From Paramoeba atlantica (taxonomy: Eukaryota; Protista; Discosea), in NCBI GenBank assembly GCA_977017575.1, contig CDRNVI010000087.1, positions 124,001 through 188,000 on the forward strand: a stretch of DNA of 64,000 nt. Direction: 5' to 3'. The notes beneath the pieces are model-generated. The model did no database searches and had not been told where the DNA came from. It worked only from the letters and a program-made list of their open reading frames with translations. The position numbers and the translations under genes are program-made. Each line of letters opens with the position of its first letter. Positions within the stretch are counted from its first letter, which is position 1. Of this stretch, positions 5,768 through 52,901 are shown piece by piece.

Positions 5768-5801
5768 CAACAAGGTACAGAAACTGTATCTTTATCGTTA
5801 A
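5768..5801 (-). other. Spliced-leader exon remnant, 34 nt (TTAACGATAAAGATACAGTTTCTGTACCTTGTTG)
   Basis: Identical to 33252-33285. Carries the ACAGTTTCTGTAC core of kinetoplastid/diplonemid SL exons (established knowledge). Not followed by a GT donor. Confidence 0.85.
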
Positions 5802-6634
5802 TCTTTTTGCAATTTTTGATGCACGAGATCCACGTCAATGCGCCGGGCTCGCCAATATGCATCGCGCATCGTCTGAATGATTGCTTTTCCCATTTCCAAG
5901 TAAACTCCCTGATCCCAACCTTGAGTCATCCGCGCAAAAAGAATCCACTTGCAAAAAACATTTTCAAAAAATCGTTCTTGTTGCTTCAGAAAAGTCCGGT
6001 CGGTGAAAAACTGGTTCACGCGAAGTCCAAATTCTGGTGCTTCTCGCAGTTCTCGCATCAAATCCCGTACGCGAAATCCCCCGTCATCAAAGGCGTTAAT
6101 CCATGGGGTGAACGTAATCGGCTCGTAAGGATCCAGGCCGTTAGGGTCCAAATTGGCACTCGGTCCGAAAGGAATTCCAGTTTCCACAGTATCAGCATTA
6201 ACAATAGCCTCGTTTGTCCCCCCACCATCCGGGAAATTCTGACTAGTACGTAATCCATTGGCGGCCGACCCTTGTTCTAGCCCCGTAGTCGCCGGAGGAT
6301 CATCTATGATCGAAATGTCATAATAGTACAAGTCGGCGTGCGGAAATGGATACTCTTTTGAGGGTTCATTATCCCAGACACCCCATAATTCAATCCCTTC
6401 TTTTCGAATCTTACCTTGCACAACTTGCATTGCCTCAGAAGAAGAGTCCTTGCGTCGAAATTTGGCCCTAACATTGACCGCCACCCTACTCAACAGTTTT
6501 TCTCGGGCAACAGTGCACACCAAACTCAGCTCCTGCTGCGACAACGGCTCGGTAGGCTCGGGCCGTTGAACTGCAGGAGACGAACTGCGCGATGACCGTA
6601 AATTTCGGGTAGAGTGAAGTTCGAGTTGTGTCAT
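5798..6634 (-). pseudogene. gag piece 1 (N-terminal ~278 aa); the stop is created by the SL insertion junction
   Basis: Long ORF upstream of the YR/RT on the same strand. It ends exactly at the SL junction and continues into pieces 2-4. Confidence 0.65.
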
Positions 6635-6945
6635 CGCAACTTTCCTTTTGCGAGTGGAAAAAGGTTATAAGTCACTAGAGTAAAATAATGTATAGTATAG
6701 TATGCTAAAAGTATAATTACATGGTTCCCCCCGGAGGGGGCAAAATCAGGTACATATATGTATATGTGCCCCGTAGGGCCACGGTCAAAGAATAAATATT
6801 TTCTTCAAGCAATTCTTTCCGTAAACTCTAAATATTCGTATTGTTGTTGTTGGATATTCATATTATTTTCATTAATTATGTGTGGCATGCGCATGCAAAA
6901 AGATCATGTGCTCGTTGAAAGCAGGACGAGACACTCTTCATTTCC

Positions 6946-16460: not shown

Positions 16461-16469
16461 AAAAAAAAT

Positions 16470-17418: not shown

Positions 17419-17431
17419 CAACAAGGTACAG
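17419..17431 (-). other. SL remnant (CTGTACCTTGTTG) followed by TTTTGTTG reiterations; repeated at 27408-27420
   Basis: Exact match to the last 13 nt of the SL-like exon, upstream of the family C 5' UTR. Confidence 0.7.
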
Positions 17432-18860
17432 ACCAAGTCGTGGAAAATCTGCTGATCAAGAAAATGGAGAAACACAAGTGCCTATTCCGCAGGTTGTTGC
17501 TTATGGGTCCCAGTAATTTGTCTCTTGCCATTCTCCGCCGTTGTACGATTCCACGGCACGATTACCATCTACGAGTACATCGGCCAGGCGCTACTTTCCA
17601 ACTAGCACAATCCTTCGAGAACCAAGTAAACAAAGTTCTAGAAAAGTGGAGTGGAGCAGACGCAAACGCCCTGAAACTCGCCGCTCTACCACAGAAACTC
17701 GGTGGCCTAGGCTTAATTTCCTCGACTCTGAAGCAAAAACATTTCTTCGAAACTGCCAGCAAATCTATTGATGAGCACCTTAAACCCAATAACGCTCCGG
17801 TAGATCAGAAAGGCAGCGAAAAAGCTGTGAAACAACCGCAAAGTCGAGGAGAGGCAGCGCGCAAGCTATTGAAAAAGAAGCTAAGTGCAGAACACGATAA
17901 ACAGATAACTGAGCTGCAGAAGGATTCTCACATGGGACTTTTATTGAAGCGTACAAAGGAATCAAACATGCATTTAGAAAGCACCAGCAATTATGTAAAC
18001 CCGTACCTCTTCCGATACACTTTGATGATGCGTTTGGGCATCGGATTACATAACGCACCGGCCGATGTTATATGCCCTGGATGCTGTGGCCATGAATCTC
18101 CTACCAGCATTATACCACACGTCGCAGGATGCTCCCGGTGCTCGGGCATGAATTGCACCAGAAAGCACTCACACATAGTGAGGTACCTCGCAGATTTGTG
18201 CTCCAAAGCTGGTCTCCCTTGTATTATCGAACCGCGCATCCATTCTTCGTTTTTCTGTACTAAGTGCAAGTGTTCCATCTCAGCGGAAGTAGCTGAACAT
18301 CATCCTTGCAAAGCCCGCAGAATCCGATCCGGTCCTGATCTTGCTATTATGTGGCCCCACATGGGGGAGGTCCTGTATGATTTTACCGTTGTTCACACTT
18401 GTTGCAGCAGCTATGCCAAACAAACAAGTACAGCGCTGATGCAGCACGTGCTCGACAAGAAATTCAAGAAGTACGTTACGGAGAAAGGCGTAGAAAGCGA
18501 CTCTTTTCGTTGCCTGGCCGCCTCTGACTGCGGTCTTCTGCACAACGACACCAAAACCCTCCTCAAGGCATTATCCCAACGAGCCAAACAAAAGTACGAA
18601 GACGTACGTGAGGCCTTCCAACTCGAGATAGAAAAGCTAGCAGCGTATACTATTGTATCGCAGCTCCGCGAGTATATTCCAGAAGCACATTGGATTGGTG
18701 GACTGCGTCAGTGAGTCGACCAACAAGTTCGCACATTAGAAAAGCTCTTAAAAGTTCTTATTATTATTCACAACGATTATCCGTGTTTAGAATGCCTGCG
18801 AGATTTAGGATAATACGAACGATCTTTGGGAGAAGGCTCAGAAAAAAAAAAAAAAAAATA
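17432..18860 (+). mobile_element. 5'-truncated CRE family I (thumb + Zn + REL, stop at 18714, poly(A))
   Basis: LPQKLGGLG, CPGC, IEPR, RSGPDLAIMW..YDFTVVH. Appears identical to 27421-28855. Confidence 0.9.
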
Positions 18861-22782: not shown

Positions 22783-22800
22783 CAACAAGGTACAGAAACT
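22783..22800 (-). other. SL remnant, 18 nt (AGTTTCTGTACCTTGTTG), 33 nt upstream of the RTE ATG
   Basis: Exact match to the 3' part of the SL-like exon. Confidence 0.85.
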
Positions 22801-27387: not shown

Positions 27388-27420
27388 TCAACAACAAAAC
27401 AACAAAACAACAAGGTACAG

Positions 27421-28855
27421 ACCAAGTCGTGGAAAATCTGCTGATCAAGAAAATGGAGAAACACAAGTGCCTATTCCGCAGGTTGTTGCTTATGGGTCCC
27501 AGTAATTTGTCTCTTGCCATTCTCCGCCGTTGTACGATTCCACGGCACGATTACCATCTACGAGTACATCGGCCAGGCGCTACTTTCCAACTAGCACAAT
27601 CCTTCGAGAACCAAGTAAACAAAGTTCTAGAAAAGTGGAGTGGAGCAGACGCAAACGCCCTGAAACTCGCCGCTCTACCACAGAAACTCGGTGGCCTAGG
27701 CTTAATTTCCTCGACTCTGAAGCAAAAACATTTCTTCGAAACTGCCAGCAAATCTATTGATGAGCACCTTAAACCCAATAACGCTCCGGTAGATCAGAAA
27801 GGCAGCGAAAAAGCTGTGAAACAACCGCAAAGTCGAGGAGAGGCAGCGCGCAAGCTATTGAAAAAGAAGCTAAGTGCAGAACACGATAAACAGATAACTG
27901 AGCTGCAGAAGGATTCTCACATGGGACTTTTATTGAAGCGTACAAAGGAATCAAACATGCATTTAGAAAGCACCAGCAATTATGTAAACCCGTACCTCTT
28001 CCGATACACTTTGATGATGCGTTTGGGCATCGGATTACATAACGCACCGGCCGATGTTATATGCCCTGGATGCTGTGGCCATGAATCTCCTACCAGCATT
28101 ATACCACACGTCGCAGGATGCTCCCGGTGCTCGGGCATGAATTGCACCAGAAAGCACTCACACATAGTGAGGTACCTCGCAGATTTGTGCTCCAAAGCTG
28201 GTCTCCCTTGTATTATCGAACCGCGCATCCATTCTTCGTTTTTCTGTACTAAGTGCAAGTGTTCCATCTCAGCGGAAGTAGCTGAACATCATCCTTGCAA
28301 AGCCCGCAGAATCCGATCCGGTCCTGATCTTGCTATTATGTGGCCCCACATGGGGGAGGTCCTGTATGATTTTACCGTTGTTCACACTTGTTGCAGCAGC
28401 TATGCCAAACAAACAAGTACAGCGCTGATGCAGCACGTGCTCGACAAGAAATTCAAGAAGTACGTTACGGAGAAAGGCGTAGAAAGCGACTCTTTTCGTT
28501 GCCTGGCCGCCTCTGACTGCGGTCTTCTGCACAACGACACCAAAACCCTCCTCAAGGCATTATCCCAACGAGCCAAACAAAAGTACGAAGACGTACGTGA
28601 GGCCTTCCAACTCGAGATAGAAAAGCTAGCAGCGTATACTATTGTATCGCAGCTCCGCGAGTATATTCCAGAAGCACATTGGATTGGTGGACTGCGTCAG
28701 TGAGTCGACCAACAAGTTCGCACATTAGAAAAGCTCTTAAAAGTTCTTATTATTATTCACAACGATTATCCGTGTTTAGAATGCCTGCGAGATTTAGGAT
28801 AATACGAACGATCTTTGGGAGAAGGCTCAGAAAAAAAAAAAAAAAAAAAAAAAAT
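27421..28855 (+). mobile_element. Second copy of 5'-truncated CRE family I
   Basis: Same protein sequence as 17440-18714. Confidence 0.9.
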
Positions 28856-29741: not shown

Positions 29742-32655
29742 CCCGCGAAGAAACACATGACCCGCGAAGAACACAGACCCGCGAAGAAACACATGTTAAA
29801 AAGGCCAGAGCGCTTAAGCTGGACACAGGAGCTGAAGACGTAGACCATCTCCCAATTCCAACCGCGAAAACCATTAGTCCTGATTTTATCTCCAGTGTGA
29901 TTGCCATATACAGGGACATCATGCACATCTATGCAGAAAGCGACTACGTACAAAGAAATCAAATTTGGAATAAAGTTTTGTCTGCAATGAAACTTTCATT
30001 AGCTTCTGTGCGTCAAGCCAATAGTAGACAACGGCGGCGAAGACCCATACAACAAGAGACAGTTGAACACAATCAACCAGAAGACGAGTTTTTTCATGAG
30101 GACAAGCGAGCAATCAAACGGGCCACTCGTTTGGTGCTAGAAAACTGTACATCGAAGGCTTCAAGGATTTTGGACTGTTCTTTTCAGAAGAGCACATTGA
30201 CTGATCAAGAAAAAGTCCAAAAACTACGTGCACTTCATCCAGAACAAAACTGCAATTTCAAAGTTCCGGAAGATGCACCGATTATCGCAGGAATAGCCGT
30301 ACAAGAATTAAGATGTGCAAGTAGACGACTGGCAAAAGGTGTGAGCCCTGGGCCTACAGGTAAGACCGACAGCATGGTTAGACTTCTCATAGACGACGAG
30401 CCATGTTGCAATAGTCTTTGTCACATGATGAGCGATCTGATCAACGGATTCCTATCTAGACAAGTTCTACAGCGTCTAAATCGGGCAAGACTCGTAGCCA
30501 TCGACAAGCCCAACGGGGGAGTACGCCCAGTAGCTATTGGAGAAATATTTAGCAAATTAGCTGGAATAATTCTGCTGCAAAGATACGAAAAGTCACTGGA
30601 ACCCCTCTTTGCACCAATGCAACAAGGCGTATTCTCTCAAGCGGGGTGCGAACGAATCGTACACAAGTTGCGGGACCGCTGGCTTGACGGACACTCAATC
30701 CTGACTGTGGATATGCAAAATGCATTCAACTCACCCTCACGAGAGGAAATTGCAAAGTGCGTTTTTGCTTTCGCTACACTGAAACCCTTTCAAAGGTTCT
30801 TTGCGGCCGAATATTCAAATGCTTCCGAACTTTTATTTTATGGCTCCGATGGCAGCCTGACGGACATTATAATGAGCTCAGCAGGTGTACGGCAAGGGTC
30901 CGCTCTGGCTAGTCTTTACTTTTGCGTATTCTGTCAACCAATACTCGAGACACTGGCCTCCGAATTTCCAGGTATTGAAATAAATGCATACATTGACGAT
31001 ATAACGTTAGTGTCTCGAGATTCAACCGAACTGGAGAAAGCATTCTTTAGGCTCAAAGGTCTCCTAGAAGAAAAACAGGTGAAACTAGCCGAGGCAAAAT
31101 GCGTTTGGTTCAGAGGAAAATCCGGAAATTCCATACCGAATTCGCTGAGCACCCAAGGTGTAAAGTCGGAGGACGAAGCGGTCAAAGTACTCGGAGCGTA
31201 TATTGGAGAAAACAACACAATAAGTGAACGACTTTTGCGTCAACTAGAGAAGCAGGTCACAGCTTTTCGGCGGCTAAAACGAATGGGCATCAATAATATA
31301 TCGATGATTCTTTTAGCAAAATGTGCCAATGTTCGTCAACAGTACCTGATTCGTGTCCACCCGCCCGAAACAACAGAGAAAGCATCATCACAATTCGATC
31401 AAGAGGTTGAAAATGTGGTAGAGACTTGGATTGGTCCACTCTCTCCTGATCAAATGAAAATTGTACGATTACCCGTTAAGAAGGGAGGAATGGGTTTGAC
31501 AGCGAGCAGTCCCCTTAGGGAGACGGCATATGTGGCATCCCGCTACTCGGTTCTTGAGCGCCGAAACTCTTTTTCAGCTCGGATCGACAACGCGGTGCCA
31601 TCACACCCGTCTATTCCTAAGAACTCGACAATGAAAGTCATACCAGTGGACGAAAAAGCTTCCACCAGCATTCATCATGTCGAAGTATTGAAAGAGTTGC
31701 AAACGGATCCCGACATTAAGCCCATTCTACAAGCCACATCCTTCAAAGGAAACAGCGACTGGATCCTTTCCAACGCGAAGTACATCCCTTCCCATCTCTT
31801 CAAACTCGCGATTATGCCACGACTAAATGCCCAACACCCAGATCTACCTACCAGTCTATTGTGTCCAGGGTGCGGTATTCTCCTCAATAACCGAAACGCC
31901 CTCACCCATATCCCAGGCTGTGCTCAATGTTCAGGTATAAATACGACCGTGAAACATAACTCACTTGTCGGATTTTTACATCGTCTATGCGTGAAAGCAG
32001 GCATCCCATGTGAAACGGAACCTAGAAACTTTTCTACGTGGAAGTGCATCGCTTGCCGATCCACAATCAGTCCGGAAAACCAGTTGGTACATCAGAAGAC
32101 TTGTGCAGGAAAAAAACTTTGTCGGTCTGGCCCCGATCTCGTGATCTATTGGAACACGGGTGCGGTCTTCTATGATCTGACAGTTATTCACGAACTCTCA
32201 ATGTCTAATCGTGGAAAGAAATGCACACAGTTCATGAATGACGCGCTGCAGCGAAAGTCCAACACATATGTACGTACGAACTTAATTCGTGAAGACTCAT
32301 TTCAATGTTTACCCGTACTGGCAGGAGGCGCTTTGCACCGCAATACGCAGAACTTGGTACACTCGCTAGCAGACGCGGCCATGCTAAACAGGAAACAGGT
32401 CGAACTCGAAATGAAGCTGACGATTCAGGAGCTTAATGGATTAGGGATTTATGCGCAGCTAAAGAAATACTTAGACGGCTGCACGCAAACTCAAGAATAT
32501 AGTATATAAGTTCTAAACACAATATCACTATAAGCTGAGTCAGCTTATAAAATTATATAGATTTCATTTTCGGGATAGTTTCTCTTTGAAAATTGAGAGA
32601 AGGGGGGAAGGTGAACATGTCTCACATTTGATAGTAAAAAAAAAAAAAAAAAAAA
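29742..32655 (+). mobile_element. 5'-truncated CRE family F copy (ORF to 32509, poly(A) from ~32636)
   Basis: Only four amino-acid differences seen against 37369-41436. The 5' junction carries a triple ACCCGCGAAGAA reiteration. Confidence 0.92.
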
Positions 32656-33240: not shown

Positions 33241-33246
33241 TGTGTT

Positions 33247-33285
33247 AAACTTTAACGATAAAGATACAGTTTCTGTACCTTGTTG
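33247..33285 (+). other. Putative full-length 39-nt SL exon copy (AAACTTTAACGATAAAGATACAGTTTCTGTACCTTGTTG)
   Basis: CAGTTTCTGT falls at positions 21-30 and the exon ends in TTG, the same register as the 39-nt trypanosomatid SL (recalled, not searched). The first 5 nt could belong to the target. Confidence 0.8.
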
Positions 33286-36500: not shown

Positions 36501-37040
36501 AAAAAACATTGTTCGATACAAAAAAAATGAAATACGATAGGAAGAAGTGGAAAAGGTAGGAGGATAAAAAAAAAGCGTTTGAAGAGTAGATGTGTCTACG
36601 TTGTAGGGGATGGTGTCTGTTTCATTATGGAGTATTGTACGATACTTGCCCTGAGATGAATGTTCACAGACAGTGACACATGTGCCGCGCTGTTTGAATC
36701 AGCTTGTGAGCATCAAAGCCACAACGCTCGAGAAACACACATGCACTCATCTCCTTTTTCGTTTGGCATTTGACACGTTTTTCAGTTTTTTGTTCTAAAA
36801 GTGACGTTCGATTTGGGGTGGTGTGGATCGCGCTTTGGAGCCAGGAAGTCGTGCGAGGCTGTCGGCTATCCGAACGGCGGCTTCTCGAATCTTGTCCCGC
36901 TGGGAGGTGCAGAATGGCATCGGAGAGATGAAAATAAATCAAGCACGATTAGATTCATACGGACGAATTCTTAGCTGGAGAGAATGGTGGAAAACTGTTC
37001 ACTCGATCTTGATCAGTTCCTTGTGGTAGAGACTCGGAAG

Positions 37041-37121: not shown

Positions 37122-37327
37122 TTTTCCTTCCACAAGCGTTGTCAAATCATATTCAGCGCGGGATACCAACTACGCCCGCACCGCTCTTCTTCTCTCTTCT
37201 TCTTCTTCTATTCCGCGCGGAGTTTTTTTGAAAAGGTGTGATGCCCAGCGGCGCGGCACCCGTCGTGGGAACGCACGCTCCGCATAAAAGACGTTGTTCT
37301 GAATCTCGAGGCGGTTTTACCCACACA

Positions 37328-40300
37328 CTGTACCTTGTTGATTTATTTTCTATTACTTTCTCACTTTCATGGGCATGTTCACGCGGAGCCGGGCGAAAGA
37401 AACGGGAGTAGCTCCCGTCGTACAGCCTCTACCTCCGACCCGTCGCAGGAAGAAAACAATTGAGGAGAAACCGCCTGAGGCTCCGTCCGAACCGAGCGCT
37501 TCTCCTTCGCCGCCCCCGCCGCCCCCGCCGCCCTCACCACCCACGACTTTGTCCACTGAAACTCCGTCTCTTCCATCGCCCGTCCCCGCCGCATCGCGGT
37601 CACCTACTTCACCGCCACTTCCGCCGCCACTACCGCCGCCATCACCACCATCAACGCCATCTGAGTGTCCACAATCTCCTCCTCCGTCGATGCGTCGATC
37701 GCCGACCCCACTGCCGAAAAGTGACTGCAAAGTCACAATTAAGAACGCACTGCTGTCTTCAAATTTCTTCAATCGGCGAAACAAACAACTCAACCTTCTT
37801 CAGACAAGAGCTGACAAAGTGTCGCAAGACGAGAGCCCAACCATTCGTCACCCAGAAGGATGCATCAAAATAAGAACGAACACCGCTCGGAACACAGCAT
37901 TTACGAACTGGAGCAAGGAACCAACGTACGCTCAGGCGGCCACCCCTCCACCAAAAGATCCCACTACTCTGGATGAACTCGTTTTACGACCGTTAAATCC
38001 GTCGGCCGTTGCCATGGACAGTTACCGTAAGAAGGCTAAAGTTCTGCAGGATGCTATCATCCAAAAGGAAAACGAGCACAACAAGAGTACAAAGAACGTC
38101 CAGGAAAACGGACGCGTACAAAACAACGAACCGATTCAGTACGGCGAAATTGCGCCCAACGGCGACGAAGGTTTCCGACCTGACACATCGAGCGAAATAC
38201 AGGTAATTAGCACGACTCCGGGCCCCAAAACCAAGGAGTATGGAAGTAACACCGAGTTCTACGACTGCATCACGCCAGACACACAAGAAAAGGACAAACC
38301 AACCGAAACAACAAATCAAGTCATCAGGATACTTTATAGCGAAGGAAATCCGGAACAAGACAACCACATCGGTGGCATCATAAAATCGATAAATCCAGAC
38401 ACCGAATTCCCCATTCCTTTCGAGCGCATACAGAAGTCTTGTTCTTCAATAAAAAAAGGAACCAAATGCACAGTGGCGTGGACATTCGATAAACAAACCG
38501 CCTTGAACATCTCCGAAGGAACCGTAACACGATCCGCGAATCGGACCGGGGCGTCGAAACTACATTTGAGCTATAAAGGTCTGTTCGGCCATCGTGCAGA
38601 AGAAAGTTTTCCAGGTTTTCTTCCTCCGCAAGAAAATATCCGTGTATATCAGATCCGTTGGTACAGAGCTCCTCCAGCCATTGACGAGAACCTTCCTATT
38701 GAGACCCGCGAAGAAACACATGTTAAAAAGGCCAGAGCGCTTAAGCTGGACACAGGAGCTGAAGACGTAGACCATCTCCCAATTCCAACCGCGAAAACCA
38801 TTAGTCCTGATTTTATCTCCAGTGTGATTGCCATATACAGGGACATCATGCACATCTATGCAGAAAGCGACTACGTACAAAGAAATCAAATTTGGAATAA
38901 AGTTTTGTCTGCAATGAAACTTTCATTAGCTTCTGTGCGTCAAGCCAATAGTAGACAACGGCGGCGAAGACCCATACAACAAGAGACAGTTGAACACAAT
39001 CAATCAGAAGACGAGTTTTTTCATGAGGACAAGCGAGCAATCAAACGGGCCACTCGTTTGGTGCTAGAAAACTGTACATCGAAGGCTTCAAGGATTTTGG
39101 ACTGTTCTTTTCAGAAGAGCACGTTGACTGATCAAGAAAAAGTCCAAAAACTACGTGCACTTCATCCAGAACAAAACTGCAATTTCAAAGTTCCGGAAGA
39201 TGCACCGATTATCGCAGGAATAGCCGTACAAGAATTAAGATGTGCAAGTAGACGACTGGCAAAAGGTGTGAGCCCTGGGCCTACAGGTACGACCGACAGC
39301 ATCGTAAGACTTCTCATAGACGACGAGCCATGTTGCAATAGCCTTTGTCACATGATGAGCGATCTGATCAACGGATTCCTATCTAGACAAGTTCTACAGC
39401 GTCTAAATCGGGCAAGACTCGTAGCCATCGACAAGCCCAACGGGGGAGTACGCCCAGTAGCTATTGGAGAAATATTTAGCAAATTAGCTGGAATAATTCT
39501 GCTGCAAAGATACGAAAAGTCACTAGAACCCCTCTTTGCACCAATGCAACAAGGCGTATTCTCTCAAGCGGGGTGCGAACGAATCGTACACAAGTTGCGG
39601 GACCGCTGGCTTGACGGACACTCAATCCTGACTGTGGATATGCAAAATGCATTCAACTCACCCTCACGAGAGGAAATTGCAAAGTGCGTTTTTGCTTTCG
39701 CTACACTGAAACCCTTTCAAAGGTTCTTTGCGGCCGAATATTCAAATGCTTCCGAACTTTTATTTTATGGCTCCGATGGCAGCCTGACGGACATTATAAT
39801 GAGCTCAGCAGGTGTACGGCAAGGGTCCGCTCTGGCTAGTCTTTACTTTTGCGTATTCTGTCAACCAATACTCGAGACACTGGCCTCCGAATTTCCAGGT
39901 ATTGAAATAAATGCATACATTGACGATATAACGTTAGTGTCTCGAGATTCAACCGAACTGGAGAAAGCATTCTTTAGGCTCAAAGGTCTCCTAGAAGAAA
40001 AACAGGTGAAACTAGCCGAGGCAAAATGCGTTTGGTTCAGAGGAAAATCCGGAAATTCCATACCGAATTCGCTGAGCACCCAAGGTGTAAAGTCGGAGGA
40101 CGAAGCGGTCAAAGTACTCGGAGCGTATATTGGAGAAAACAACACAATAAGTGAACGACTTTTGCGTCAACTAGAGAAGCAGGTCACAGCTTTTCGGCGG
40201 CTAAAACGAATGGGCATCAATAATATATCGATGATTCTTTTAGCAAAATGTGCCAATGTTCGTCAACAATACCTGATTCGTGTTCACCCGCCCGAAACAA

Positions 40301-41608
40301 CAGAGAAAGCATCAACACAATTCGATCAAGAGGTTGAAAATGTGGTAGAGACTTGGATTGGTCCACTCTCTCCTGATCAAATGAAAATTGTACGATTACC
40401 CGTTAAGAAGGGAGGAATGGGTTTGACAGCGAGCAGTCCCCTTAGGGAGACGGCATATGTGGCATCCCGCTACTCGGTTCTTGAGCGCCGAAACTCTTTT
40501 TCAGCTCGGATCGACAACGCGGTGCCATCACACCCGTCTATTCCTAAGAACTCGACAATGAAAGTCATACCAGTGGACGAAAAAGCTTCCACCAGCATTC
40601 ATCATGTCGAAGTATTGAAAGAGTTGCAAACGGATCCCGACATTAAGCCCATTCTACAAGCCACATCCTTCAAAGGAAACAGCGACTGGATCCTTTCCAA
40701 CGCGAAGTACATCCCTTCCCATCTCTTCAAACTCGCGATTATGCCACGACTAAATGCCCAACACCCAGATCTACCTACCAGTCTATTGTGTCCAGGGTGC
40801 GGTATTCTCCTCAATAACCGAAACGCCCTCACCCATATCCCAGGCTGTGCTCAATGTTCAGGTATAAATACGACCGTGAAACATAACTCACTTGTCGGAT
40901 TTTTACATCGTCTATGCGTGAAAGCAGGCATCCCATGTGAAACGGAACCTAGAAACTTTTCTACGTGGAAGTGCATCGCTTGCCGATCCACAATCAGTCC
41001 GGAAAACCAGTTGGTACATCAGAAGACTTGTGCAGGAAAAAAACTTTGTCGGTCTGGCCCCGATCTCGTGATCTATTGGAACACGGGTGCGGTCTTCTAT
41101 GATCTGACAGTTATTCACGAACTCTCAATGTCTAATCGTGGAAAGAAATGCACACAGTTCATGAATGACGCGCTGCAGCGAAAGTCCAACACATATGTAC
41201 GTACGAACTTAATTCGTGAAGACTCATTTCAATGTTTACCCGTACTGGCAGGAGGCGCTTTGCACCGCAATACGCAGAACTTGGTACACTCGCTAGCAGA
41301 CGCGGCCATGCTAAACAGGAAACAGGTCGAACTCGAAATGAAGCTGACGATTCAGGAGCTTAATGGATTAGGGATTTATGCGCAGCTAAAGAAATACTTA
41401 GACGGCTGCACGCAAACTCAAGAATATAGTATATAAGTTCTAAACACAATATCACTATAAGCTGAGTCAGCTTATAAAATTATATAGATTTCATTTTCGG
41501 GATAGTTTCTCTTTGAAAATTGAGAGAAGGGGGGAAGGTGAACATGTCTCACATTTGATAGTAATCGGCGCGTATATAATATATGCGCTCCACGGGCTAA
41601 AAAAAAAA
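37328..41608 (+). mobile_element. Full-length CRE family F element with SL remnant (37328-37340) and poly(A), inserted in the tRNA array
   Basis: CCCACA at 37320-25 and 41624-29. The empty site TTTTACCCACAGAAGC is present in later array units. Confidence 0.9.
37369..41436 (+). CDS. Intact 1355-aa CRE-like protein (Pro-rich N-terminus, pre-RT module, RT, Zn, REL)
   Basis: GVRPVAIGE, TVDMQNAFNS, GVRQGSALAS, AYIDD, CPGC..HIPGC, ETEPR, RSGPDLVIYW..YDLTVIH. Confidence 0.95.
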   Translation: MGMFTRSRAKETGVAPVVQPLPPTRRRKKTIEEKPPEAPSEPSASPSPPPPPPPPSPPTTLSTETPSLPSPVPAASRSPTSPPLPPPLPPPSPPSTPSECPQSPPPSMRRSPTPLPKSDCKVTIKNALLSSNFFNRRNKQLNLLQTRADKVSQDESPTIRHPEGCIKIRTNTARNTAFTNWSKEPTYAQAATPPPKDPTTLDELVLRPLNPSAVAMDSYRKKAKVLQDAIIQKENEHNKSTKNVQENGRVQNNEPIQYGEIAPNGDEGFRPDTSSEIQVISTTPGPKTKEYGSNTEFYDCITPDTQEKDKPTETTNQVIRILYSEGNPEQDNHIGGIIKSINPDTEFPIPFERIQKSCSSIKKGTKCTVAWTFDKQTALNISEGTVTRSANRTGASKLHLSYKGLFGHRAEESFPGFLPPQENIRVYQIRWYRAPPAIDENLPIETREETHVKKARALKLDTGAEDVDHLPIPTAKTISPDFISSVIAIYRDIMHIYAESDYVQRNQIWNKVLSAMKLSLASVRQANSRQRRRRPIQQETVEHNQSEDEFFHEDKRAIKRATRLVLENCTSKASRILDCSFQKSTLTDQEKVQKLRALHPEQNCNFKVPEDAPIIAGIAVQELRCASRRLAKGVSPGPTGTTDSIVRLLIDDEPCCNSLCHMMSDLINGFLSRQVLQRLNRARLVAIDKPNGGVRPVAIGEIFSKLAGIILLQRYEKSLEPLFAPMQQGVFSQAGCERIVHKLRDRWLDGHSILTVDMQNAFNSPSREEIAKCVFAFATLKPFQRFFAAEYSNASELLFYGSDGSLTDIIMSSAGVRQGSALASLYFCVFCQPILETLASEFPGIEINAYIDDITLVSRDSTELEKAFFRLKGLLEEKQVKLAEAKCVWFRGKSGNSIPNSLSTQGVKSEDEAVKVLGAYIGENNTISERLLRQLEKQVTAFRRLKRMGINNISMILLAKCANVRQQYLIRVHPPETTEKASTQFDQEVENVVETWIGPLSPDQMKIVRLPVKKGGMGLTASSPLRETAYVASRYSVLERRNSFSARIDNAVPSHPSIPKNSTMKVIPVDEKASTSIHHVEVLKELQTDPDIKPILQATSFKGNSDWILSNAKYIPSHLFKLAIMPRLNAQHPDLPTSLLCPGCGILLNNRNALTHIPGCAQCSGINTTVKHNSLVGFLHRLCVKAGIPCETEPRNFSTWKCIACRSTISPENQLVHQKTCAGKKLCRSGPDLVIYWNTGAVFYDLTVIHELSMSNRGKKCTQFMNDALQRKSNTYVRTNLIREDSFQCLPVLAGGALHRNTQNLVHSLADAAMLNRKQVELEMKLTIQELNGLGIYAQLKKYLDGCTQTQEYSI

Positions 41609-42228
41609 CCAGATCTTTGATTGCCCACAGAAGCTGCATTCGCAGGCCTTTCAGTGCAATTTTCGCCGGGACAGCCCACAGAAAACACCCTTTACCTGAG
41701 AGAGGTGCATTTGGGAACGTGAATACGAAACGAGCGAACAGATCACCCGCCCACAAAATCGTGGAGCATCGAGTGTCGCCGAGTAAATTGAAAGGTGTGA
41801 TGGAGAAACAGGCGGAATGAGGTGGAATACAATGGTGTGCTGCATGGCGAGGTTGTGGTGTTTGTTTGCGCTGTTGGGGGTAGAGGTGTCTAGTTTGGTG
41901 TGAATTTGTTATCGCATTGGATGTTTCTGTGAAAATCATATTTTCCGGAGTAAGCATACGGTGGGGTGGGGGATACAATGGTGCGCTGCGTGGTGCGTCG
42001 GGTGTGCTTGTTGTGGCGTTTGAAGAGTAGATGTGTCTACGTTGTAGGGGATGGTGTCTGTTTCATTATGGAGTATTGTACGATACTTGCCCTGTACCTT
42101 GTTGTACCTTGTTGTATTAATTACTAAAAACATACCCCCCATGCGCCCCTTCAACCCACCCCCCTCCCAGAGGAAAACTCCCTCGTATCACCGCCCCTTT
42201 GTGGCCGACGTCGCCCCCTTCACCCTGC

Positions 42229-46833: not shown

Positions 46834-47257
46834 CCTTCACCCTGCGCCCTCCACTTCGCTGCTCCCTTCGCTCACCCTGCCTCAATTCCCGCGCTCCTTC
46901 GCGGCCCTTTTTCGCCCCCCTCCGCGCCACGATCTCGGCCGCCCTCCCGCTCCGGTGCTCTCCTCGCCGCGCTCTCCCTCGCTGTTTTTTTTTTGCTCCC
47001 TCCCGTGCCCCCCTCCGCGCTCCACGCCACGCTCTCCGTCGCCCTTCCCCTCTGGCGCTCTCCTCCCGCGCTCTCCGCCGCTGTTTTTTTTTCTTCGTTG
47101 TCTTCGCCCTCCCCTCGCCACCCCCTTGGTCGCCCTCTGTTGCCCCCTGCGTCGCTCTGCCGCGCCGCTTTTCGCCCCCCACCCACTGCGCTGTCCCCTT
47201 CGCCGCCCATTCCCCCTCCCTCCCTGCTCCCACCTGCGCCACTCTTTCCCTTCCCAC

Positions 47258-47495
47258 AACAACAACAACAACAACACTGATATAATCAGTTAAGGGGTAA
47301 TATTTTCCCTTAAACATCTTCACACCTTAGATTAAAAACACTGACCACACAACTGTTTACCATATCTCAAATTTAATGTTTGTTTTAATGAGTCCTCGCA
47401 TAATGATGAGTCTTTTCATTACAATAAACCAGGAAATGGAACCACCAACGCCCCTAGAGTTCAACGCAAATTGAAGGTATCAACTACTTGAGCGC
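47258..47495 (-). mobile_element. 238-bp insertion with a (TTG)n end and 12-bp TSD TTCCCTTCCCAC
   Basis: Absent from the other retroposon copies. TSD at 47246-57 and 47496-507. Strand inferred from the microsatellite end. Confidence 0.8.
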
Positions 47496-48491
47496 TTCCC
47501 TTCCCACTCTTTCCCTTCATCCCCTCTGCCACCCCCTCACGCTGCATCTCGAAGAATGGCGCCGCCCGGTACCGAATATAACAAGGTACTAAAAAACTAG
47601 GGTAGGCGTCATTCACGCTTTTCTTTTCTTTTTTCTTTCTTTCTGCGGCTTGCAACTAGCCCATGATAACGGGGCTAGGGTAACAATTTGGAGAGATACG
47701 AGCTTGTTGAAGCTGAGGTTTGGCCTGTTGAAGCTGAGGAGCCAGTCCGCTCGAGGGGATACCACCCTAGAAGACTTGGTCCGTTGAAGCTGAGGTGCTA
47801 AAACCGTTGAAGCTGAGAGTCGACACTCCCAAACTATGCCAGCAAGCAGGCAAGGGGTCAAGGAGCACTGCTTTTGGCAGTGTCGGGGTGTGGCGAACCC
47901 CACCCTCCTAGCTAATCCAGATTCCCGCAGCGGACTTTCAGTCTGCGCGTTAGCTGGATCGGCTTGCATTGGCTCTGTGCTGCAATCCTTTTAGGTCTGC
48001 GCATGGGTCGTGCGGGTCGGAGCTACCTTCGGCTCTCTCCGAGGAGGCAACACCCCGTCTACGGGGTTTTTACCTGAATACATAACGTAACATAACTTGC
48101 CCTGAGATGAATGTTCACAGACAGTGGCACATGTGCTGCGCTGTTTGAATCAGCATGTGAGCATCAAAGCCACAACGCTCGAGAAACACACATGCACTCA
48201 TCTCCTTTTTCGTTTGGCATTTGACACGTTTTTCAGTTTTTTGTTCTAAAAGTGACGTTCGATTTGGGGTGGTGTGGATCGCGCTTTGGAGCCAGGAAGT
48301 CGTGCGAGGCTGTCGGCTATCCGAACGGCGGCTTCTCGAATCTTGTCCCGCTGGGAGGTGCAGAATGGCATCGGAGAGATGAAAATAAATCAAGCACGAT
48401 TAGATTCATACGGACGAATTCTTAGCTGGAGAGAATGGTGGAAAACTGTTCACTCGATCTTGATCAGTTCCTTGTGGTAGAGACTCGGAAG

Positions 48492-48815
48492 GCGTCTATA
48501 CCCAAGTGGTTAAGGGGCAGCTGCCCACTCGCAGCTTCGGCAATACCTTCCTCACAAGAGCAGTGGGGAGGAATACGGGTTTTAAAGGTTTTTCAAAAGT
48601 TCAAGGTCATAGTGGTTGGCAGATTTGGATGGAGAGGTAGGACATTTATTTATATTTATTGTGTGACGTGTGTGTGGGCAGGTTGGCCGAGGGTTCCGGT
48701 GGGGGGGAACCCCGTTAACAACGAGACCTCTAAAAGCATCTCTAAAAAAAAATTAAGGGGCCTGACTTGAAATCAGGTGTGTTCTCACGCGCAGGTTCAA
48801 ACCATGCTGGGCGCG
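48492..48815 (+). pseudogene. tRNA-Ser(UGA) copy 2, disrupted in the D-arm by a 234-bp insertion
   Basis: The two tRNA halves flank the insert. Also has a T-stem mismatch (CATGC). Confidence 0.88.
48519..48752 (+). mobile_element. 234-bp poly(A)-tailed insertion with 9-bp TSD TTAAGGGGC
   Basis: TSD at 48510-18 and 48753-61. A9 tail at 48744-52. Confidence 0.88.
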
Positions 48816-49482
48816 TTTTCCTTCCACAAGCGTTGTCAAATCATATTCAGCGCGGGATACCAACTACGCCCGCACCGCTCTTCTTCTCTCTTCTTCTTCT
48901 TCTATTCCGCGCGGAGTTTTTTTGAAAAGGTGGGATGCCCAGCGGCGCGGCACCCGTCGTGGGAACGCACGCTCCGCATAAAAGACGTTGTTCTGAATCT
49001 CGAGGTGGTTTTACCCACAGAAGCTGCATTCGCAGGCCTTTCAGTGCAATTTTCGCCGGGACAGCCCACAGAAAACACCCTTTACCTGAGAGAGGTGCAT
49101 TTGGGAACGTGAATACGAAACGAGCGAACAGATCACCCGCCCACAAAATCGTGGAGCATCGAGTGTCGCCGAGTAAATTGAAAGGTGTGATGGAGAAACA
49201 GGCGGAATGAGGTGGAATACAATGGTGTGCTGCATGGCGAGGTTGTGGTGTTTGTTTGCGCTGTTGGGGGTAGAGGTGTCTAGTTTGGTGTGAATTTGTT
49301 ATCGCATTGGATGTTTCTGTGAAAATCATATTTTCCGGAGTAAGCATACGGTGGGGGGGGATACAATGGTGCGCTGCGTGGTGCGTCGGGTGTGCTTGTT
49401 GTGGCGTTTGAAGAGTAGATGTGTCTACGTTGTAGGGGATGGTGTCTGTTTCATTATGGAGTATTGTACGATACTTGCCCTG

Positions 49483-50619
49483 TACCTTGTTGTACCTTGT
49501 TGTATTAATTACTAAAAACATACCCCCCATGCGCCCCTTCAACCCACCCCCCTCCCAGAGGAAAACTCCCTCGTATCACCGCCCCTTTGTGGCCGACGTC
49601 GCCCCCTTCACCCTGCGCCCTCCACTTCGCTGCTCCCTTCGCTCACCCTGCCTCAATTCCCGCGCTCCTTCGCGGCCCTTTTTCGCCCCCCTCCGCGCCA
49701 CGATCTCGGCCGCCCTCCCGCTCCGGTGCTCTCCTCGCCGCGCTCTCCCTCGCTGTTTTTTTTTTGCTCCCTCCCGTGCCCCCCTCCGCGCTCCACGCCA
49801 CGCTCTCCGTCGCCCTTCCCCTCTGGCGCTCTCCTCCCGCGCTCTCCGCCGCTGTTTTTTTTTCTTCGTTGTCTTCGCCCTCCCCTCGCCACCCCCTTGG
49901 TCGCCCTCTGTTGCCCCCTGCGTCGCTCTGCCGCGCCGCTTTTCGCCCCCCCCCCCCCACTGCGCTGTCCCCTTCGCCGCCCATTCCCCCTCCCTCCCTG
50001 CTCCCACCTGCGCCACTCTTTCCCTTCCCACTCTTTCCCTTCATCCCCTCTGCCACCCCCTCACGCTGCATCTCGAAGAATGGCGCCGCCCGGTACCGAA
50101 TATAACAAGGTACTAAAAAACTAGGGTAGGCGTCATTCACGCTTTTCTTTTCTTTTTTCTTTCTTTCTGCGGCTTGCAACTAGCCCATGATAACGGGGCT
50201 AGGGTAACAATTTGGAGAGATACGAGCTTGTTGAAGCTGAGGTTTGGCCTGTTGAAGCTGAGGAGCCAGTCCGCTCGAGGGGATACCACCCTAGAAGACT
50301 TGGTCCGTTGAAGCTGAGGTGCTAAAACCGTTGAAGCTGAGAGTCGACACTCCCAAACTATGCCAGCAAGCAGGCAAGGGGTCAAGGAGCACTGCTTTTG
50401 GCAGTGTCGGGGTGTGGCGAACCCCACCCTCCTAGCTAATCCAGCTTCCCGCAGCGGACTTTCAGTCTGCGCGTTAGCTGGATCGGCTTGCATTGGCTCT
50501 GTGCTGCAATCCTTTTAGGTCTGCGCATGGGTCGTGCGGGTCGGAGCTACCTTCGGCTCTCTCCGAGGAGGCAACACCCCGTCTACGGGGTTTTTACCTG
50601 AATACATCACATAACATAA
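49483..50619 (+). mobile_element. SL-headed non-autonomous retroposon, copy 2 (1137 bp, (ACATA)n tail)
   Basis: TSD CTTGCCCTG at 49474-82 and 50620-28. Doubled SL remnant at 49480-49502. Confidence 0.88.
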
Positions 50620-51015
50620 CTTGCCCTGAGATGAATGTTCACAGACAGTGACACATGTGCTGCGCTGTTTGAATCAGCATGTGAGCATCAAAGCCACAAC
50701 GCTCGAGAAACACACATGCACTCATCTCCTTTTTCGTTTGGCATTTGACACGTTTTTCAGTTTTTTGTTCTAAAAGTGACGTTCGATTTGGGGTGGTGTG
50801 GATCGCGCTTTGGAGCCAGGAAGTCGTGCGAGGCTGTCGGCTATCCGAACGGCGGCTTCTCGAATCTTGTCCCGCTGGGAGGTGCAGAATGGCATCGGAG
50901 AGATGAAAACAAATCAAGCACGATTAGATTCATACGGACGAATTCTTAGCTGGAGAGAATGGTGGAAAACTGTTCACTCGATCTTGATCAGTTCCTTGTG
51001 GTAGAGACTCGGAAG

Positions 51016-51096
51016 GCGTCTATACCCAAGTGGTTAAGGGGCCTGACTTGAAATCAGGTGTGTTCTCACGCGCAGGTTCAAACCATGCTGGGCGCG
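51016..51096 (+). tRNA. tRNA-Ser(UGA) copy 3 (T-stem mismatch, function uncertain)
   Basis: As copy 1 but CATGC instead of CCTGC. Confidence 0.8.
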
Positions 51097-51763
51097 TTTT
51101 CCTTCCACAAGCGTTGTCAAATCATATTCAGCGCGGGATACCAACTACGCCCGCACCGCTCTTCTTCTCTCTTCTTCTTCTTCTATTCCGCGCGGAGTTT
51201 TTTTGAAAAGGTGGGATGCCCAGCGGCGCGGCACCCGTCGTGGGAACGCACGCTCCGCATAAAAGACGTTGTTCTGAATCTCGAGGCGGTTTTACCCACA
51301 GAAGCTGCATTCGCAGGCCTTTCAGTGCAATTTTCGCCGGGACAGCCCACAGAAAACACCCTTTACCTGAGAGAGGTGCATTTGGGAACGTGAATACGAA
51401 ACGAGCGAACAGATCACCCGCCCACAAAATCGTGGAGCATCGAGTGTCGCCGAGTAAATTGAAAGGTGTGATGGAGAAACAGGCGGAATGAGGTGGAATA
51501 CAATGGTGTGCTGCATGGCGAGGTTGTGGTGTTTGTTTGCGCTGTTGGGGGTAGAGGTGTCTAGTTTGGTGTGAATTTGTTATCGCATTGGATGTTTCTG
51601 TGAAAATCATATTTTCCGGAGTAAGCATACGGTGGGGGGGAATACAATGGTGCGCTGCGTGGTGCGTCGGGTGTGCTTGTTGTGGCGTTTGAAGAGTAGA
51701 TGTGTCTACGTTGTAGGGGATGGTGTCTGTTTCATTATGGAGTATTGTACGATACTTGCCCTG

Positions 51764-52901
51764 TACCTTGTTGTACCTTGTTGTATTAATTACTAAAAAC
51801 ATACCCCCCATGCGCCCCTTCAACCCACCCCCCTCCCAGAGGAAAACCCCCTCGTATCACCGCCCCTTTGTGGCCGACGTCGCCCCCTTCACCCTGCGCC
51901 CTCCACTTCGCTGCTCCCTTCGCTCACCCTGCCTCAATTCCCGCGCTCCTTCGCGGCCCTTTTTCGCCCCCCTCCGCGCCACGATCTCGGCCGCCCTCCC
52001 GCTCCGGTGCTCTCCTCGCCGCGCTCTCCCTCGCTGTTTTTTTTTTGCTCCCTCCCGTGCCCCCCTCCGCGCTCCACGCCACGCTCTCCGTCGCCCTTCC
52101 CCTCTGGCGCTCTCCTCCCGCGCTCTCCGCCGCTGTTTTTTTTTCTTCGTTGTCTTCGCCCTCCCCTCGCCACCCCCTTGGTCGCCCTCTGTTGCCCCCT
52201 GCGTCGCTCTGCCGCGCCGCTTTTCGCCCCCCCCCCCCCCACTGCGCTGTCCCCTTCGCCGCCCATTCCCCCTCCCTCCCTGCTCCCACCTGCGCCACTC
52301 TTTCCCTTCCCACTCTTTCCCTTCATCCCCTCTGCCACCCCCTCACGCTGCATCTCGAAGAATGGCGCCGCCCGGTACCGAATATAACAAGGTACTAAAA
52401 AACTAGGGTAGGCGTCATTCACGCTTTTCTTTTCTTTTTTCTTTCTTTCTGCGGCTTGCAACTAGCCCATGATAACGGGGCTAGGGTAACAATTTGGAGA
52501 GATACGAGCTTGTTGAAGCTGAGGTTTGGCCTGTTGAAGCTGAGGAGCCAGTCCGCTCGAGGGGATACCACCCTAGAAGACTTGGTCCGTTGAAGCTGAG
52601 GTGCTAAAACCGTTGAAGCTGAGAGTCGACACTCCCAAACTATGCCAGCAAGCAGGCAAGGGGTCAAGGAGAACTGCTTTTGGCAGTGTCGGGGTGTGGC
52701 GAACCCCACCCTCCTAGCTAATCCAGCTTCCCGCAGCGGACTTTCAGTCTGCGCGTTAGCTGGATCGGCTTGCATTGGCTCTGTGCTGCAATCCTTTTAG
52801 GTCTGCGCATGGGTCGTGCGGGTCGGAGCTACCTTCGGCTCTCTCCGAGGAGGCAACACCCCGTCTACGGGGTTTTTACCTGAATACATAACATAACATA
52901 A
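51764..52901 (+). mobile_element. SL-headed non-autonomous retroposon, copy 3
   Basis: TSD at 51755-63 and 52902-10. Confidence 0.88.

What the first reader, a model, noticed from the sequence alone, without database searches (positions are those of the whole stretch)
5768..51783. Unrelated retroelements carry a spliced-leader exon at their 5' end: retrotransposition through trans-spliced RNA
Seen: a 39-nt SL-like sequence or its 3' remnants (39, 34, 18, 13 and 6 nt) is fused directly to the 5' UTR of CRE families C, F and H (33247, 37328, 17419, ~27063), the RTE-like LINE (22783), a chimeric ORF (5768) and a non-coding retroposon (42092, 49480, 51761). In every case it is followed by a 21-35 nt AG-free UTR and an ATG, never by a GT donor. 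No SL duplicate appears at the 3' junctions. Known: trypanosomatid CRE/SLACS insert into SL RNA genes, and SL relics on retrocopies are described in dinoflagellates. Inference: here three element classes obtain their 5' end from host trans-splicing, and RT stops at variable points near the capped end. The AG inside the retained SL (TACAG) may give daughter copies a new splice acceptor.
Basis: partly seen in the sequence, partly recalled or inferred. Interest (0 to 1): 0.88.

Follow-up and report, generated by a model that had tools for sequence, protein, structure and literature searches.

The report
Retrotransposons headed by the spliced leader
In this kinetoplastid-type genome, several kinds of jumping genes begin with a DNA copy of the short leader that the cell splices onto its messenger RNAs. 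They were therefore copied back from leader-bearing RNA; I found no report of this 5' end habit for mobile elements of this group.

Summary

**What was checked**
- The leader's 3' 12-mer occurs 12 times in the window, against 0.3 expected.
- It is the exon of true SL RNA genes, followed by GT, in tandem arrays linked to 5S rRNA.
- The window holds six independent leader-headed insertions, not about ten. Sites 17419 and 27408 are one duplicated event. Sites 42092, 49480 and 51761 are one insertion inside a tandemly repeated tRNA-Ser unit. The "6 nt" relic is the target duplication of a nested insertion.

**Evidence that the leader belongs to the insert**
- Two elements have exact target-site duplications and empty paralogous sites in the window, which place the relic inside the inserted DNA.
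- The ten heads of one young R2/CRE-type family (nine flank contexts) carry relics of 3 to 36 nt.

**Genome-wide**
- 963 sites hold at least 16 nt of the leader.
- None of 60 sampled sites is an SL gene, and they show over 35 different leaders.
- Stacked relics occur. Pieces starting after the leader's internal AGs (16 nt at 14-17 sites, 22 nt at 2 sites) fit re-splicing. A commoner 10-nt stack fits reverse-transcriptase slippage.

**Limits**
- No RNA data were available.
- How heads are renewed is only partly resolved.
- The scan found the same phenomenon before on other pieces of this genome.
- No published report for kinetoplastid mobile elements was found.

The parts
5768..5801 (-). 34-nt SL relic heading an unclassified ORF-bearing repeat (leader 5733-5767, ORF 3975-5732)
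   Evidence: A second genomic copy of the same head (L057) has a 36-nt relic and a different flank. The ORF has no Pfam hit.
17419..17432 (-). 14-nt SL relic heading an R2/CRE-type element ('CRE-H'; leader 17379-17418, truncated ORF 16383-17378)
   Evidence: An independent copy elsewhere (L022) has a stacked 8+16-nt head.
27408..27421 (-). Duplicate of the 17419 head (the same event, segmentally duplicated). Its leader is split by a nested insertion at 27069-27379 with a 12-bp TSD; the ORF is 24399-27041.
22783..22800 (-). 18-nt SL relic heading an APE+RT LINE (leader 22750-22782, ORF 18868-22749)
   Evidence: The other heads of this LINE seen (C55, L022) lack the SL and carry T-rich 18-nt head repeats.
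33247..33285 (+). Full 38-nt SL plus one extra A, heading a degenerate R2/CRE-type element ('CRE-C'; leader 33286-33316, ATG at 33317)
   Evidence: This leader is unique in the genome.
37328..37340 (+). 13-nt SL relic heading an intact R2/CRE-type element ('CRE-F'; leader 37341-37368, ORF 37369-41436)
37320..41629 (+). Whole CRE-F insertion with its 6-bp target-site duplication CCCACA (37320-37325 and 41624-41629). The 3' end is poly(A) plus 15 extra bases.
   Evidence: (joint 37319 to 41624, 6 letters shared).
51280..51310 (+). Empty paralogous site for the CRE-F insertion (flank, one CCCACA, flank)
42093..42114 (+). Stacked relic (12 nt plus a repeated 10 nt) heading a 1.14-kb non-coding retroposon. 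Copy 1 spans 42093-48094 and is interrupted by a 4.6-kb nested element at 42229-46833.
49481..50618 (+). Copy 2 of the same retroposon, uninterrupted (1138 bp), flanked by the TSD (A)CTTGCCC. Copy 3 starts at 51762.
36637..36660 (+). Empty site for the retroposon (one ACTTGCCC at 36644-36651, between the same two flanks)
29775..32637 (+). 5'-truncated CRE-F copy (3' 2.9 kb, 99.65% identical to 38702-41564), showing ordinary 5' truncation in this family

Best explanation
These retroelements were reverse-transcribed from RNAs that carried the host's 38-nt spliced leader at the 5' end. These were mRNA-like transcripts, trans-spliced and, in most families, polyadenylated.

**Proposed mechanism**
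- Target-primed reverse transcription copies the RNA from its 3' end and stops at variable points inside the leader.
- Each DNA copy therefore begins, inside its target-site duplication, with 3 to 38 nt of the leader's 3' part, joined exactly to the element's own short leader.
- Relic-bearing copies can be transcribed again within host transcription units.
- They can be re-spliced at an AG inside the relic or in nearby flank. This produces stacked relics.
- The reverse transcriptase also slips and jumps on leader sequence.

**Shown**
- The relic is identical to the real SL exon.
- The relic lies inside the insert.
- Relic length varies among near-identical copies.
- SL gene context is absent.
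- Stacked forms exist.

**Inferred**
- The element RNA itself is trans-spliced.
- Reverse transcription is blocked near the cap.
- The routes by which heads are renewed.
For: **The leader is real**
- True SL genes have the exon followed by GTATGAG in tandem repeats that carry 5S rRNA genes. Further arrays lie on other contigs.

**The relic belongs to the insert**
- CRE-F has the TSD CCCACA and an empty paralog at 51280. The retroposon has the TSD (A)CTTGCCC and an empty site at 36644.

**Variable truncation**
- All 10 CRE-F heads in the assembly (97-100% identical; nine flank contexts, one pair shares a flank) carry relics of 36, 35, 35, 13, 8, 7, 6, 6, 4 and 3 nt.

**Genome scale**
- 963 sites hold the exact 16-mer, against 0 in the reversed control.
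- 1471 sites hold the 10-mer, against 156 in the control.
- In the first 60 sites there is no SL gene and there are over 35 different leaders. Relic length peaks at 36 nt.
- Leaders have a median of 33 nt and are 76% pyrimidine. 21 of 30 are AG-free.

**Re-use of relic-bearing copies**
- A 16-nt stack occurs at 14 exact and 3 near-exact sites in at least 8 families.
- A 22-nt stack occurs twice. Heads with short non-SL spacers between two relics also occur.

**3' ends**
- They vary in position and carry poly(A) tails of different length, as expected of polyadenylated templates.
Against: - No RNA data could be obtained. The runs that hold the sequence look like DNA, and the one possible RNA run has nothing.
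- No SL-less source copy (AG directly before the leader) exists in the assembly for CRE-F or for the SINE-like GT family. It is therefore unclear how a fresh leader is placed at the same junction each round.
- In CRE-F the youngest copies have the shortest relics and the more diverged copies the longest. This fits inheritance with erosion as well as it fits fresh splicing.
- The commonest stack (10 nt, at least 43 sites) starts after TG, not AG.
- The assembly contains collinear duplicate stretches (C1 and C3), so counts overstate the number of independent events.
Confidence: 0.8

Rival explanations
1. Inherited relic. Only the founder of each family was copied from a trans-spliced RNA. Later copies are made from relic-bearing sources, so the relic is ordinary element sequence that erodes by 5' truncation, and no fresh leader is added.
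For: - CRE-F has no SL-less master. Its young copies have 3-13 nt relics and its older copies 35-36 nt.
- The SINE-like GT family has relics of only 21-31 nt and no AG|GTAC source. Most of the 65 sites with at least 34 nt followed by GT lie in tandem arrays, as SL genes do; the rest were not inspected.
Against: - Heads of 34-38 nt are the majority (26 of 48 distinct junctions) across more than 30 different leaders. Erosion alone would not maintain this.
- Stacked relics show that new leaders are added to old heads.
- Daughters do not carry parental flank.
- This is a rival for the mode of renewal, not for the origin of the heads.
Confidence: 0.3
2. The leader is added at the cDNA stage. The reverse transcriptase, on reaching the 5' end of an unspliced element RNA, jumps onto leader sequence of another RNA (an mRNA, or the free SL exon intermediate) and copies it.
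For: - Full-length heads directly follow another element's poly(A) tail in 12 of 26 cases, against 1 of 22 for truncated heads (Fisher p = 0.0012). This is as expected of end-to-end template jumps.
- 3'-truncated pieces of the leader's 5' part sit upstream of complete relics (L029, L033, L054, L013). Splicing cannot make these.
- The 10-nt stack is recurrent in at least 25 different leaders.
Against: - It needs an acceptor RNA that ends exactly at the exon's last base. Such an RNA is only a transient spliceosomal intermediate.
- The junction is constant within a family, which is explained more simply by one splice acceptor.
- The jumps seen here may all follow the copying of a normally spliced RNA.
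Confidence: 0.1
3. CRE/SLACS-style insertion into SL RNA genes, with the exon as target DNA or target-site duplication.
For: - The families with a C-terminal endonuclease resemble the R2/CRE group.
- Known members of that group in trypanosomatids target SL genes (established knowledge; PMC4728078 lists SLACS/CZAR as site-specific).
Against: - Flanks are unique and unrelated to SL gene repeats.
- The relic is the exon's 3' part, truncated from the 5' side.
- Empty sites lack any SL sequence.
- There is no SL at 3' junctions.
- None of 60 sampled sites is an SL gene.
Confidence: 0.01

Closest known systems
Dinoflagellate retrogenes with DinoSL relics ('recycling of processed cDNAs'; PMC5585692, PMC6050394, PMC12014239)
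   Same: - DNA copies of trans-spliced RNAs keep the leader at their 5' end.
- Relics can stack when a retrocopy is spliced again at an AG inside the old leader.
   Different: - There the tagged sequences are host genes. One study found that RT-encoding genes and relic-bearing genes did not overlap in function, and took retroposition and retrotransposition to be independent processes (bioRxiv 10.1101/783902).
- Here the tagged sequences are the retroelements themselves, in many families.
- The commonest stack here is at a non-AG position.
CRE1/CRE2/SLACS/CZAR, the SL-gene-specific retrotransposons of trypanosomatids
   Same: - Same host group.
- RT followed by a C-terminal cysteine motif and a PD...D...K-like endonuclease region.
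- Profile hits to R2 proteins.
   Different: - Those elements sit inside SL RNA genes at a fixed exon position.
- These elements are dispersed with short ordinary TSDs and carry the exon's 3' end as part of the insert.
L1Tc/ingi with the Pr77 head (internal promoter plus HDV-like ribozyme; PMC1874656, PMC3185411)
   Same: A kinetoplastid answer to the problem of defining a retroelement's 5' end inside polycistronic transcription.
   Different: - Pr77 gives unspliced transcripts and is a conserved 77-nt element sequence.
- Here the 5' end is the host leader itself, and no ribozyme family was detected in the window.
Processed pseudogenes and L1 5' truncation or extra 5' bases in mammals
   Same: - Variable 5' truncation.
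- TSDs and poly(A) tails.
- Chimeric copies made by template switching.
   Different: The 5' tag here comes from trans-splicing and marks autonomous elements.

Membership tests
Retrocopies of SL-trans-spliced RNA (dinoflagellate-type SL relics) | The relic is identical to the host SL exon and ends at the exon's last base | tested here: met
   The exon of the SL-5S arrays matches the relics base for base. The junction is always after ...GTTG.
Retrocopies of SL-trans-spliced RNA (dinoflagellate-type SL relics) | The relic lies at the 5' boundary of the inserted DNA, inside the target-site duplication | tested here: met
   Shown for CRE-F and for the 1.14-kb retroposon, each with a TSD and an empty site.
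Retrocopies of SL-trans-spliced RNA (dinoflagellate-type SL relics) | Stacked relics at an AG inside the older relic | tested here: inconclusive
   The 16-nt stack occurs at 14+3 sites, the 22-nt stack at 2 and the 28-nt stack at 0. This fits AG use, but one-base microhomology slippage is not excluded. The 10-nt non-AG stack is commoner.
Retrocopies of SL-trans-spliced RNA (dinoflagellate-type SL relics) | Transcripts with the leader joined at that junction exist | not testable with these tools
   No RNA run for this organism was available.
CRE/SLACS/CZAR clade | RT followed by a C-terminal restriction-like endonuclease with a cysteine motif | tested here: inconclusive
   The family profile hits R2 proteins at E about 1e-25, against 1e-12 for L1 ORF2. 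Conserved C-P-C...H...C and PD...D...K positions were seen by eye. No Pfam model hit the C-terminus. No phylogeny was made.
CRE/SLACS/CZAR clade | Site-specific insertion inside SL RNA gene exons | tested here: not met
   The ten CRE-F copies lie in nine flank contexts (one pair shares its flank), none an SL gene.
L1Tc/ingi (Pr77 head) | Conserved 77-nt head with an HDV-like ribozyme | tested here: not met
   The Rfam gathering scan of the window found only three tRNAs. Heads are the SL relic plus family-specific leaders.
   APE and RT lie in one 1293-aa ORF and the tail has 18-nt tandem repeats. The clade was not tested by phylogeny.

The most novel reading that the evidence does not exclude
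The retroelements of this kinetoplastid have given up promoters and ribozymes. They use the host spliced leader as a universal, self-renewing 5' terminal repeat.
- Trans-splicing caps and defines the RNA.
- The reverse transcriptase copies up to the hypermodified cap nucleotides.
- Heads are rebuilt in later rounds in three ways: re-splicing at AGs in the relic or flank, slippage over the TG...TG repeat, and template jumps onto leader fragments and poly(A) tails.
- The short, AG-free, pyrimidine-rich leaders shared by unrelated families would be the stable end state of that cycle.
Probability: 0.35. Interest if true: 0.85.

Novelty: new variant of a known kind. Interest (0 to 1): 0.72.

Why it matters
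Retroelements in organisms with polycistronic transcription must solve how to make a defined, capped, translatable 5' end. The known kinetoplastid answers are the Pr77 promoter-ribozyme head and parasitism of SL genes.

A third answer, simply riding the host's trans-splicing, would explain how many unrelated families stay active.

It would also give about a thousand natural records of how reverse transcriptases behave at a hypermodified cap:
- a stop two bases short of the end;
- T or C in place of the second A;
- slippage and template jumps.

Finally, it would provide a built-in tag for dating and tracing retrocopies in this lineage, as DinoSL does for dinoflagellate genes.

Tried and rejected
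**RNA evidence**
- The look-up of sequencing runs returned four runs that hold the stretch, all looking like DNA contigs, and one possible RNA run with nothing on it. Read laying therefore gave no starts or spliced forms.
- The 'empty site' joint in those contigs may come from the paralogous repeat units in the window rather than from an allele. It is used only as paralog evidence.

**Search for source copies**
- SL-less masters were sought and not found. For CRE-F, all 10 heads carry a relic. For the GT family, there are 0 sites with AG before the leader (the leading H in the pattern covers only three quarters of possible sites).
- I tested whether relic-bearing CRE-F copies are spliced at the first AG downstream of the pyrimidine-rich leader, inside the ORF. 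No such copies exist.
- Tracing a source by 3' transduction failed. The extra 3' segment is part of the element's long form, with alternative poly(A) sites.

**SL variant as a tracer**
- The SL gene variant (G at position 17) occurs at 4 dispersed and 2 array sites, too few to decide anything.

**Classification and relatives**
- The homologue search gave only unnamed ENA proteins.
- Two distant homologues from other samples have no leader upstream, so a second species was not confirmed here.
- The unclassified repeat at 5768 has only a weak tyrosine-recombinase hit (E 0.007) in a downstream ORF and no PDB hit. It was not filed as a YR element.

**Limit reached**
Later tallies rest on counts and matched strings only.
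Full report
**1. The observation**

The 3' part of a kinetoplastid-type spliced leader is present at the cited places.
- The 12-mer TGTACCTTGTTG occurs 12 times in the window, against 0.31 expected from shuffles. The 19-mer occurs 3 times against 0 expected.
- Reading each site shows that the motif always ends at ...GTTG. It is followed by a short pyrimidine-rich leader and an ATG.

**2. Is it the real leader?**

A genome search for the motif followed by GT found 417 sites.
- Most belong to a dispersed short element (see section 8).
- Two sites on contig C3, 1454 bp apart, are typical SL RNA genes. They have the exon AACTTT...GTTG, then GTATGAG and a structured intron.
- Each of these repeat units carries a 5S rRNA gene. 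This linkage is known from bodonid SL arrays (my own knowledge, not checked in a paper here).
- Longer arrays with periods near 2.56 kb lie on C97 and C107, and others on C11 and C74.
- The exon is 38 nt as I read it. The copy at 33247 has one extra A.
- I could not show the leader on host mRNAs, because no RNA run for this organism is served.

**3. What the window holds**

The window is a nest of mobile elements.
- Six ORFs have RT domains, one of them with an APE domain.
- There are also an RNase H ORF, a DDE_Tnp_4 ORF and a Tc5-type ORF.
- A self-comparison changes the count of events:
  - 17391-18929 equals 27380-28925 at 99.4%, so the heads at 17419 and 27408 are one event that was later duplicated.
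  - The '6 nt' relic near 27063 is the right-hand half of a 12-bp target duplication. It was made by an insertion of about 310 bp in the leader of the second copy.
  - The heads at 42092, 49480 and 51761 lie in a 2.28-kb tandem unit that carries tRNA-Ser(TGA). They are one insertion copied with its host unit.
- Six independent leader-headed insertions remain:

| Site | Strand | Relic | Element |
|---|---|---|---|
| 5768 | - | 34 nt | unclassified ORF-bearing repeat |
| 17419 | - | 14 nt | R2/CRE-type ('CRE-H') |
| 22783 | - | 18 nt | APE+RT LINE |
| 33247 | + | 38+1 nt | R2/CRE-type ('CRE-C'), degenerate |
| 37328 | + | 13 nt | R2/CRE-type ('CRE-F'), intact |
| 42092 | + | 12+10 nt | 1.14-kb non-coding retroposon |

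**4. The relic is part of the inserted DNA**

*CRE-F*
- Contigs of three DNA runs join 37319 to 41624 with six letters shared.
- The window's own paralogous unit at 51280 reads flank, CCCACA, flank.
- The insert is therefore bounded by a 6-bp duplication (37320-37325 and 41624-41629). It starts with two extra bases, then the 13-nt relic, then the leader.
- Its 3' end is poly(A) plus 15 more bases.

*The retroposon*
- The flanks are joined without it at 36644-36651, with one ACTTGCCC.
- Filled copies have that octamer on both sides.

In both elements the target has no leader sequence and the 3' junction has none. This excludes the exon as target DNA.

**5. Variable truncation among near-identical copies**

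The CRE-F leader occurs exactly ten times in the assembly.
- The ten heads lie in nine flank contexts. L089 and L090 share theirs and are probably haplotigs. The relic lengths are 36, 35, 35, 13, 8, 7, 6, 6, 4 and 3 nt.
- The copies are 97-100% identical over the first 420 bases.
- A 5'-truncated copy lies in the window itself (29775-32637).
- This is the classic pattern of cDNA synthesis that stops at different points on one kind of RNA, an RNA that had the leader in front of the element's own leader.
- The ORF (1355 aa) has an RT domain. As a family profile it hits R2 proteins at E about 1e-25, against 1e-12 for L1 ORF2.
- It ends with conserved C-P-C...H...C and PD...D...K positions. I therefore call it R2/CRE-type. 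Clade membership is not tested.

**6. Genome scale**

- The exact 16-mer occurs 963 times, against 0 for the reversed control. The 10-mer occurs 1471 times against 156.
- I fetched the first 60 sites in contig order. None is an SL gene.
- They give 48 distinct junctions and more than 35 different leaders.
- Relic lengths among the 48 junctions:

| Relic length | Junctions |
|---|---|
| 16 nt | 8 |
| 17-33 nt | 14 |
| 34-38 nt | 26 (peak of 15 at 36 nt) |

- In the 36-nt class, the base in place of the leader's second A is T in 11 cases, C in 4, and never G (one search list). With the known hypermodified cap4 of kinetoplastids (established knowledge), this suggests a block or misreading next to the cap. 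This is inference.
- Among 30 heads with an open frame, the leader has a median of 33 nt and is 76% pyrimidine. 21 are AG-free.
- Some junctions recur in the same order on C1 and C3, which looks like haplotigs. The counts are upper bounds.

**7. How heads are renewed**

This was left open by an earlier follow-up on this genome.

*Re-splicing at an internal AG*
- That string occurs at 14 exact and 3 one-mismatch sites (0 in the control), in at least 8 different families and with different flanks.
- A 22-nt stack, after the leader's other AG, occurs twice. A 28-nt stack, after CG, never occurs.
- Several heads have short non-leader spacers between two relics. This is expected if a relic-bearing copy was spliced at an AG in its flank.
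- These results fit recycling of the dinoflagellate kind.

*The 10-nt stack*
- A 10-nt stack (leader end plus TACCTTGTTG) is commoner: at least 43 sites in at least 25 leaders, with one triple.
- It starts after TG. The leader has TG both 12-11 and 2-1 bases from its end, so a backward slip of 10 bases by the reverse transcriptase explains it without a second round. This is inference.

*Other route tested*
- No copy is spliced at the first AG inside the CRE-F ORF.

*Source copies*
- No SL-less master (AG directly before the leader) exists for CRE-F or for the GT family.
- For the APE LINE the reverse holds. The window copy is the only SL-headed one found. Other heads (C55, L022) extend upstream into T-rich 18-nt repeats without a leader, as a source copy should.
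- In CRE-F the most diverged copies have the long relics and the youngest have the short ones. This fits erosion from relic-bearing sources.

I conclude that more than one route operates. Only RNA data can rank them.

**8. Signs of template jumping, and a family that differs**

- Heads of at least 34 nt directly follow a poly(A) run, often the tail of another element. This happens in 12 of 26 cases, against 1 of 22 for shorter relics (Fisher p = 0.0012).
- Pieces of the leader's 5' part, cut at their 3' side, sit just upstream of complete relics in several loci. Both features are what end-to-end template jumps by a non-LTR reverse transcriptase would give.
- The abundant family with the relic followed by GTAC is a non-coding element of about 0.58 kb. 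It has no poly(A) and a conserved structured 3' end.
- Its relics are 21-31 nt and never full. Most of the 65 sites with at least 34 nt before GT lie in tandem arrays, as SL genes do; the dispersed remainder was not inspected. Its head is probably inherited rather than renewed.

**9. Comparison with what is known**

- Library searches found SL relics only for dinoflagellate genes. One such study took retroposition and retrotransposition to be independent processes.
- For kinetoplastids they found the Pr77 head and the SL-gene-specific CRE/SLACS group.
- The Diplonema and VIPER/TATE papers I opened mention no leader-headed elements.
- I found no report of leader-headed retrotransposons in kinetoplastids. 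Absence from this library is not proof.
- The scan itself has reported the same phenomenon on other pieces of this genome.

**10. Verdict**

- The core reading is well supported by DNA evidence: copies were made from leader-bearing RNA, not by insertion into SL genes.
- The internal-AG idea is partly supported.
- Expression and the main renewal route are untested.

Noticed in passing
window 36644-37325, 48095-53502: A tandem array (period 2281 bp) of a unit carrying tRNA-Ser(TGA) at 37041, 51016 and 53298. One unit was hit by the 1.14-kb retroposon before the unit was duplicated. Another unit was hit by CRE-F, and another by a 4.6-kb element (42229-46833).
   Followed up: partly
L001-L010, L019 (e.g. 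G000:C3:18104): A SINE-like family of about 0.58 kb and roughly 350 copies. It has a 21-31 nt SL relic followed by GTAC, internal 77-nt repeats, no poly(A) and a conserved 3' end. No AG|GTAC source copy exists in the genome.
   Followed up: partly
L023-L026, L074 (G000:C1:9752-25045): A tandem array (period 5093 bp) in which the same 34-nt leader stands on both sides of a 37-nt SL relic. The upstream copy is preceded by AG. It looks like a retained acceptor plus a spliced copy, or a circle junction.
   Followed up: no
L059, L060 (G000:C2:544671, 553089): An inverted partial SL relic lies directly upstream of a direct 36-nt relic (hairpin-like head).
   Followed up: no
window 18930-19000 and 22750-22782; L022; G000:C55:243630: The 3' tail of the APE LINE is a tandem 18-nt repeat. 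Its reverse complement forms the repeats in the 5' heads of other copies of the same LINE.
   Followed up: no
L027, L029, L039, L040, L042, L064, L081, L016, L020: Leaders of families with unrelated ORF starts begin with nearly the same bases ((A)ATTATTTTC...). This hints at a shared constraint or at head swapping.
   Followed up: no
L039, L042, L061, L062, L064, L030, L076: The same element 3' end (...CCCCTTATTAATTGC plus poly(A)) is followed by SL heads of different families at several loci. These are head-to-tail chains of mRNA-like units.
   Followed up: no
genome-wide sample: Single relics cluster at lengths that start just after a G of the leader (16 nt in 8 of 48, 28 nt in 4 of 48, and 28 nt as the mode in the GT family). 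This is unexplained.
   Followed up: no
window 54454-56220 (-), 58938-59894 (+), 10522-11379 (-), 619-1641 (-): ORFs with Tc5-type HTH, DDE_Tnp_4 and RNase H domains, and a weak tyrosine-recombinase hit. DNA transposons and possibly a YR retroelement share the cluster.
   Followed up: no
G000:C11:3795, C97:23410: The SL gene arrays contain variant exons (C for A near the 3' end; G at position 17). The G17 variant also occurs in four dispersed relics.
   Followed up: partly
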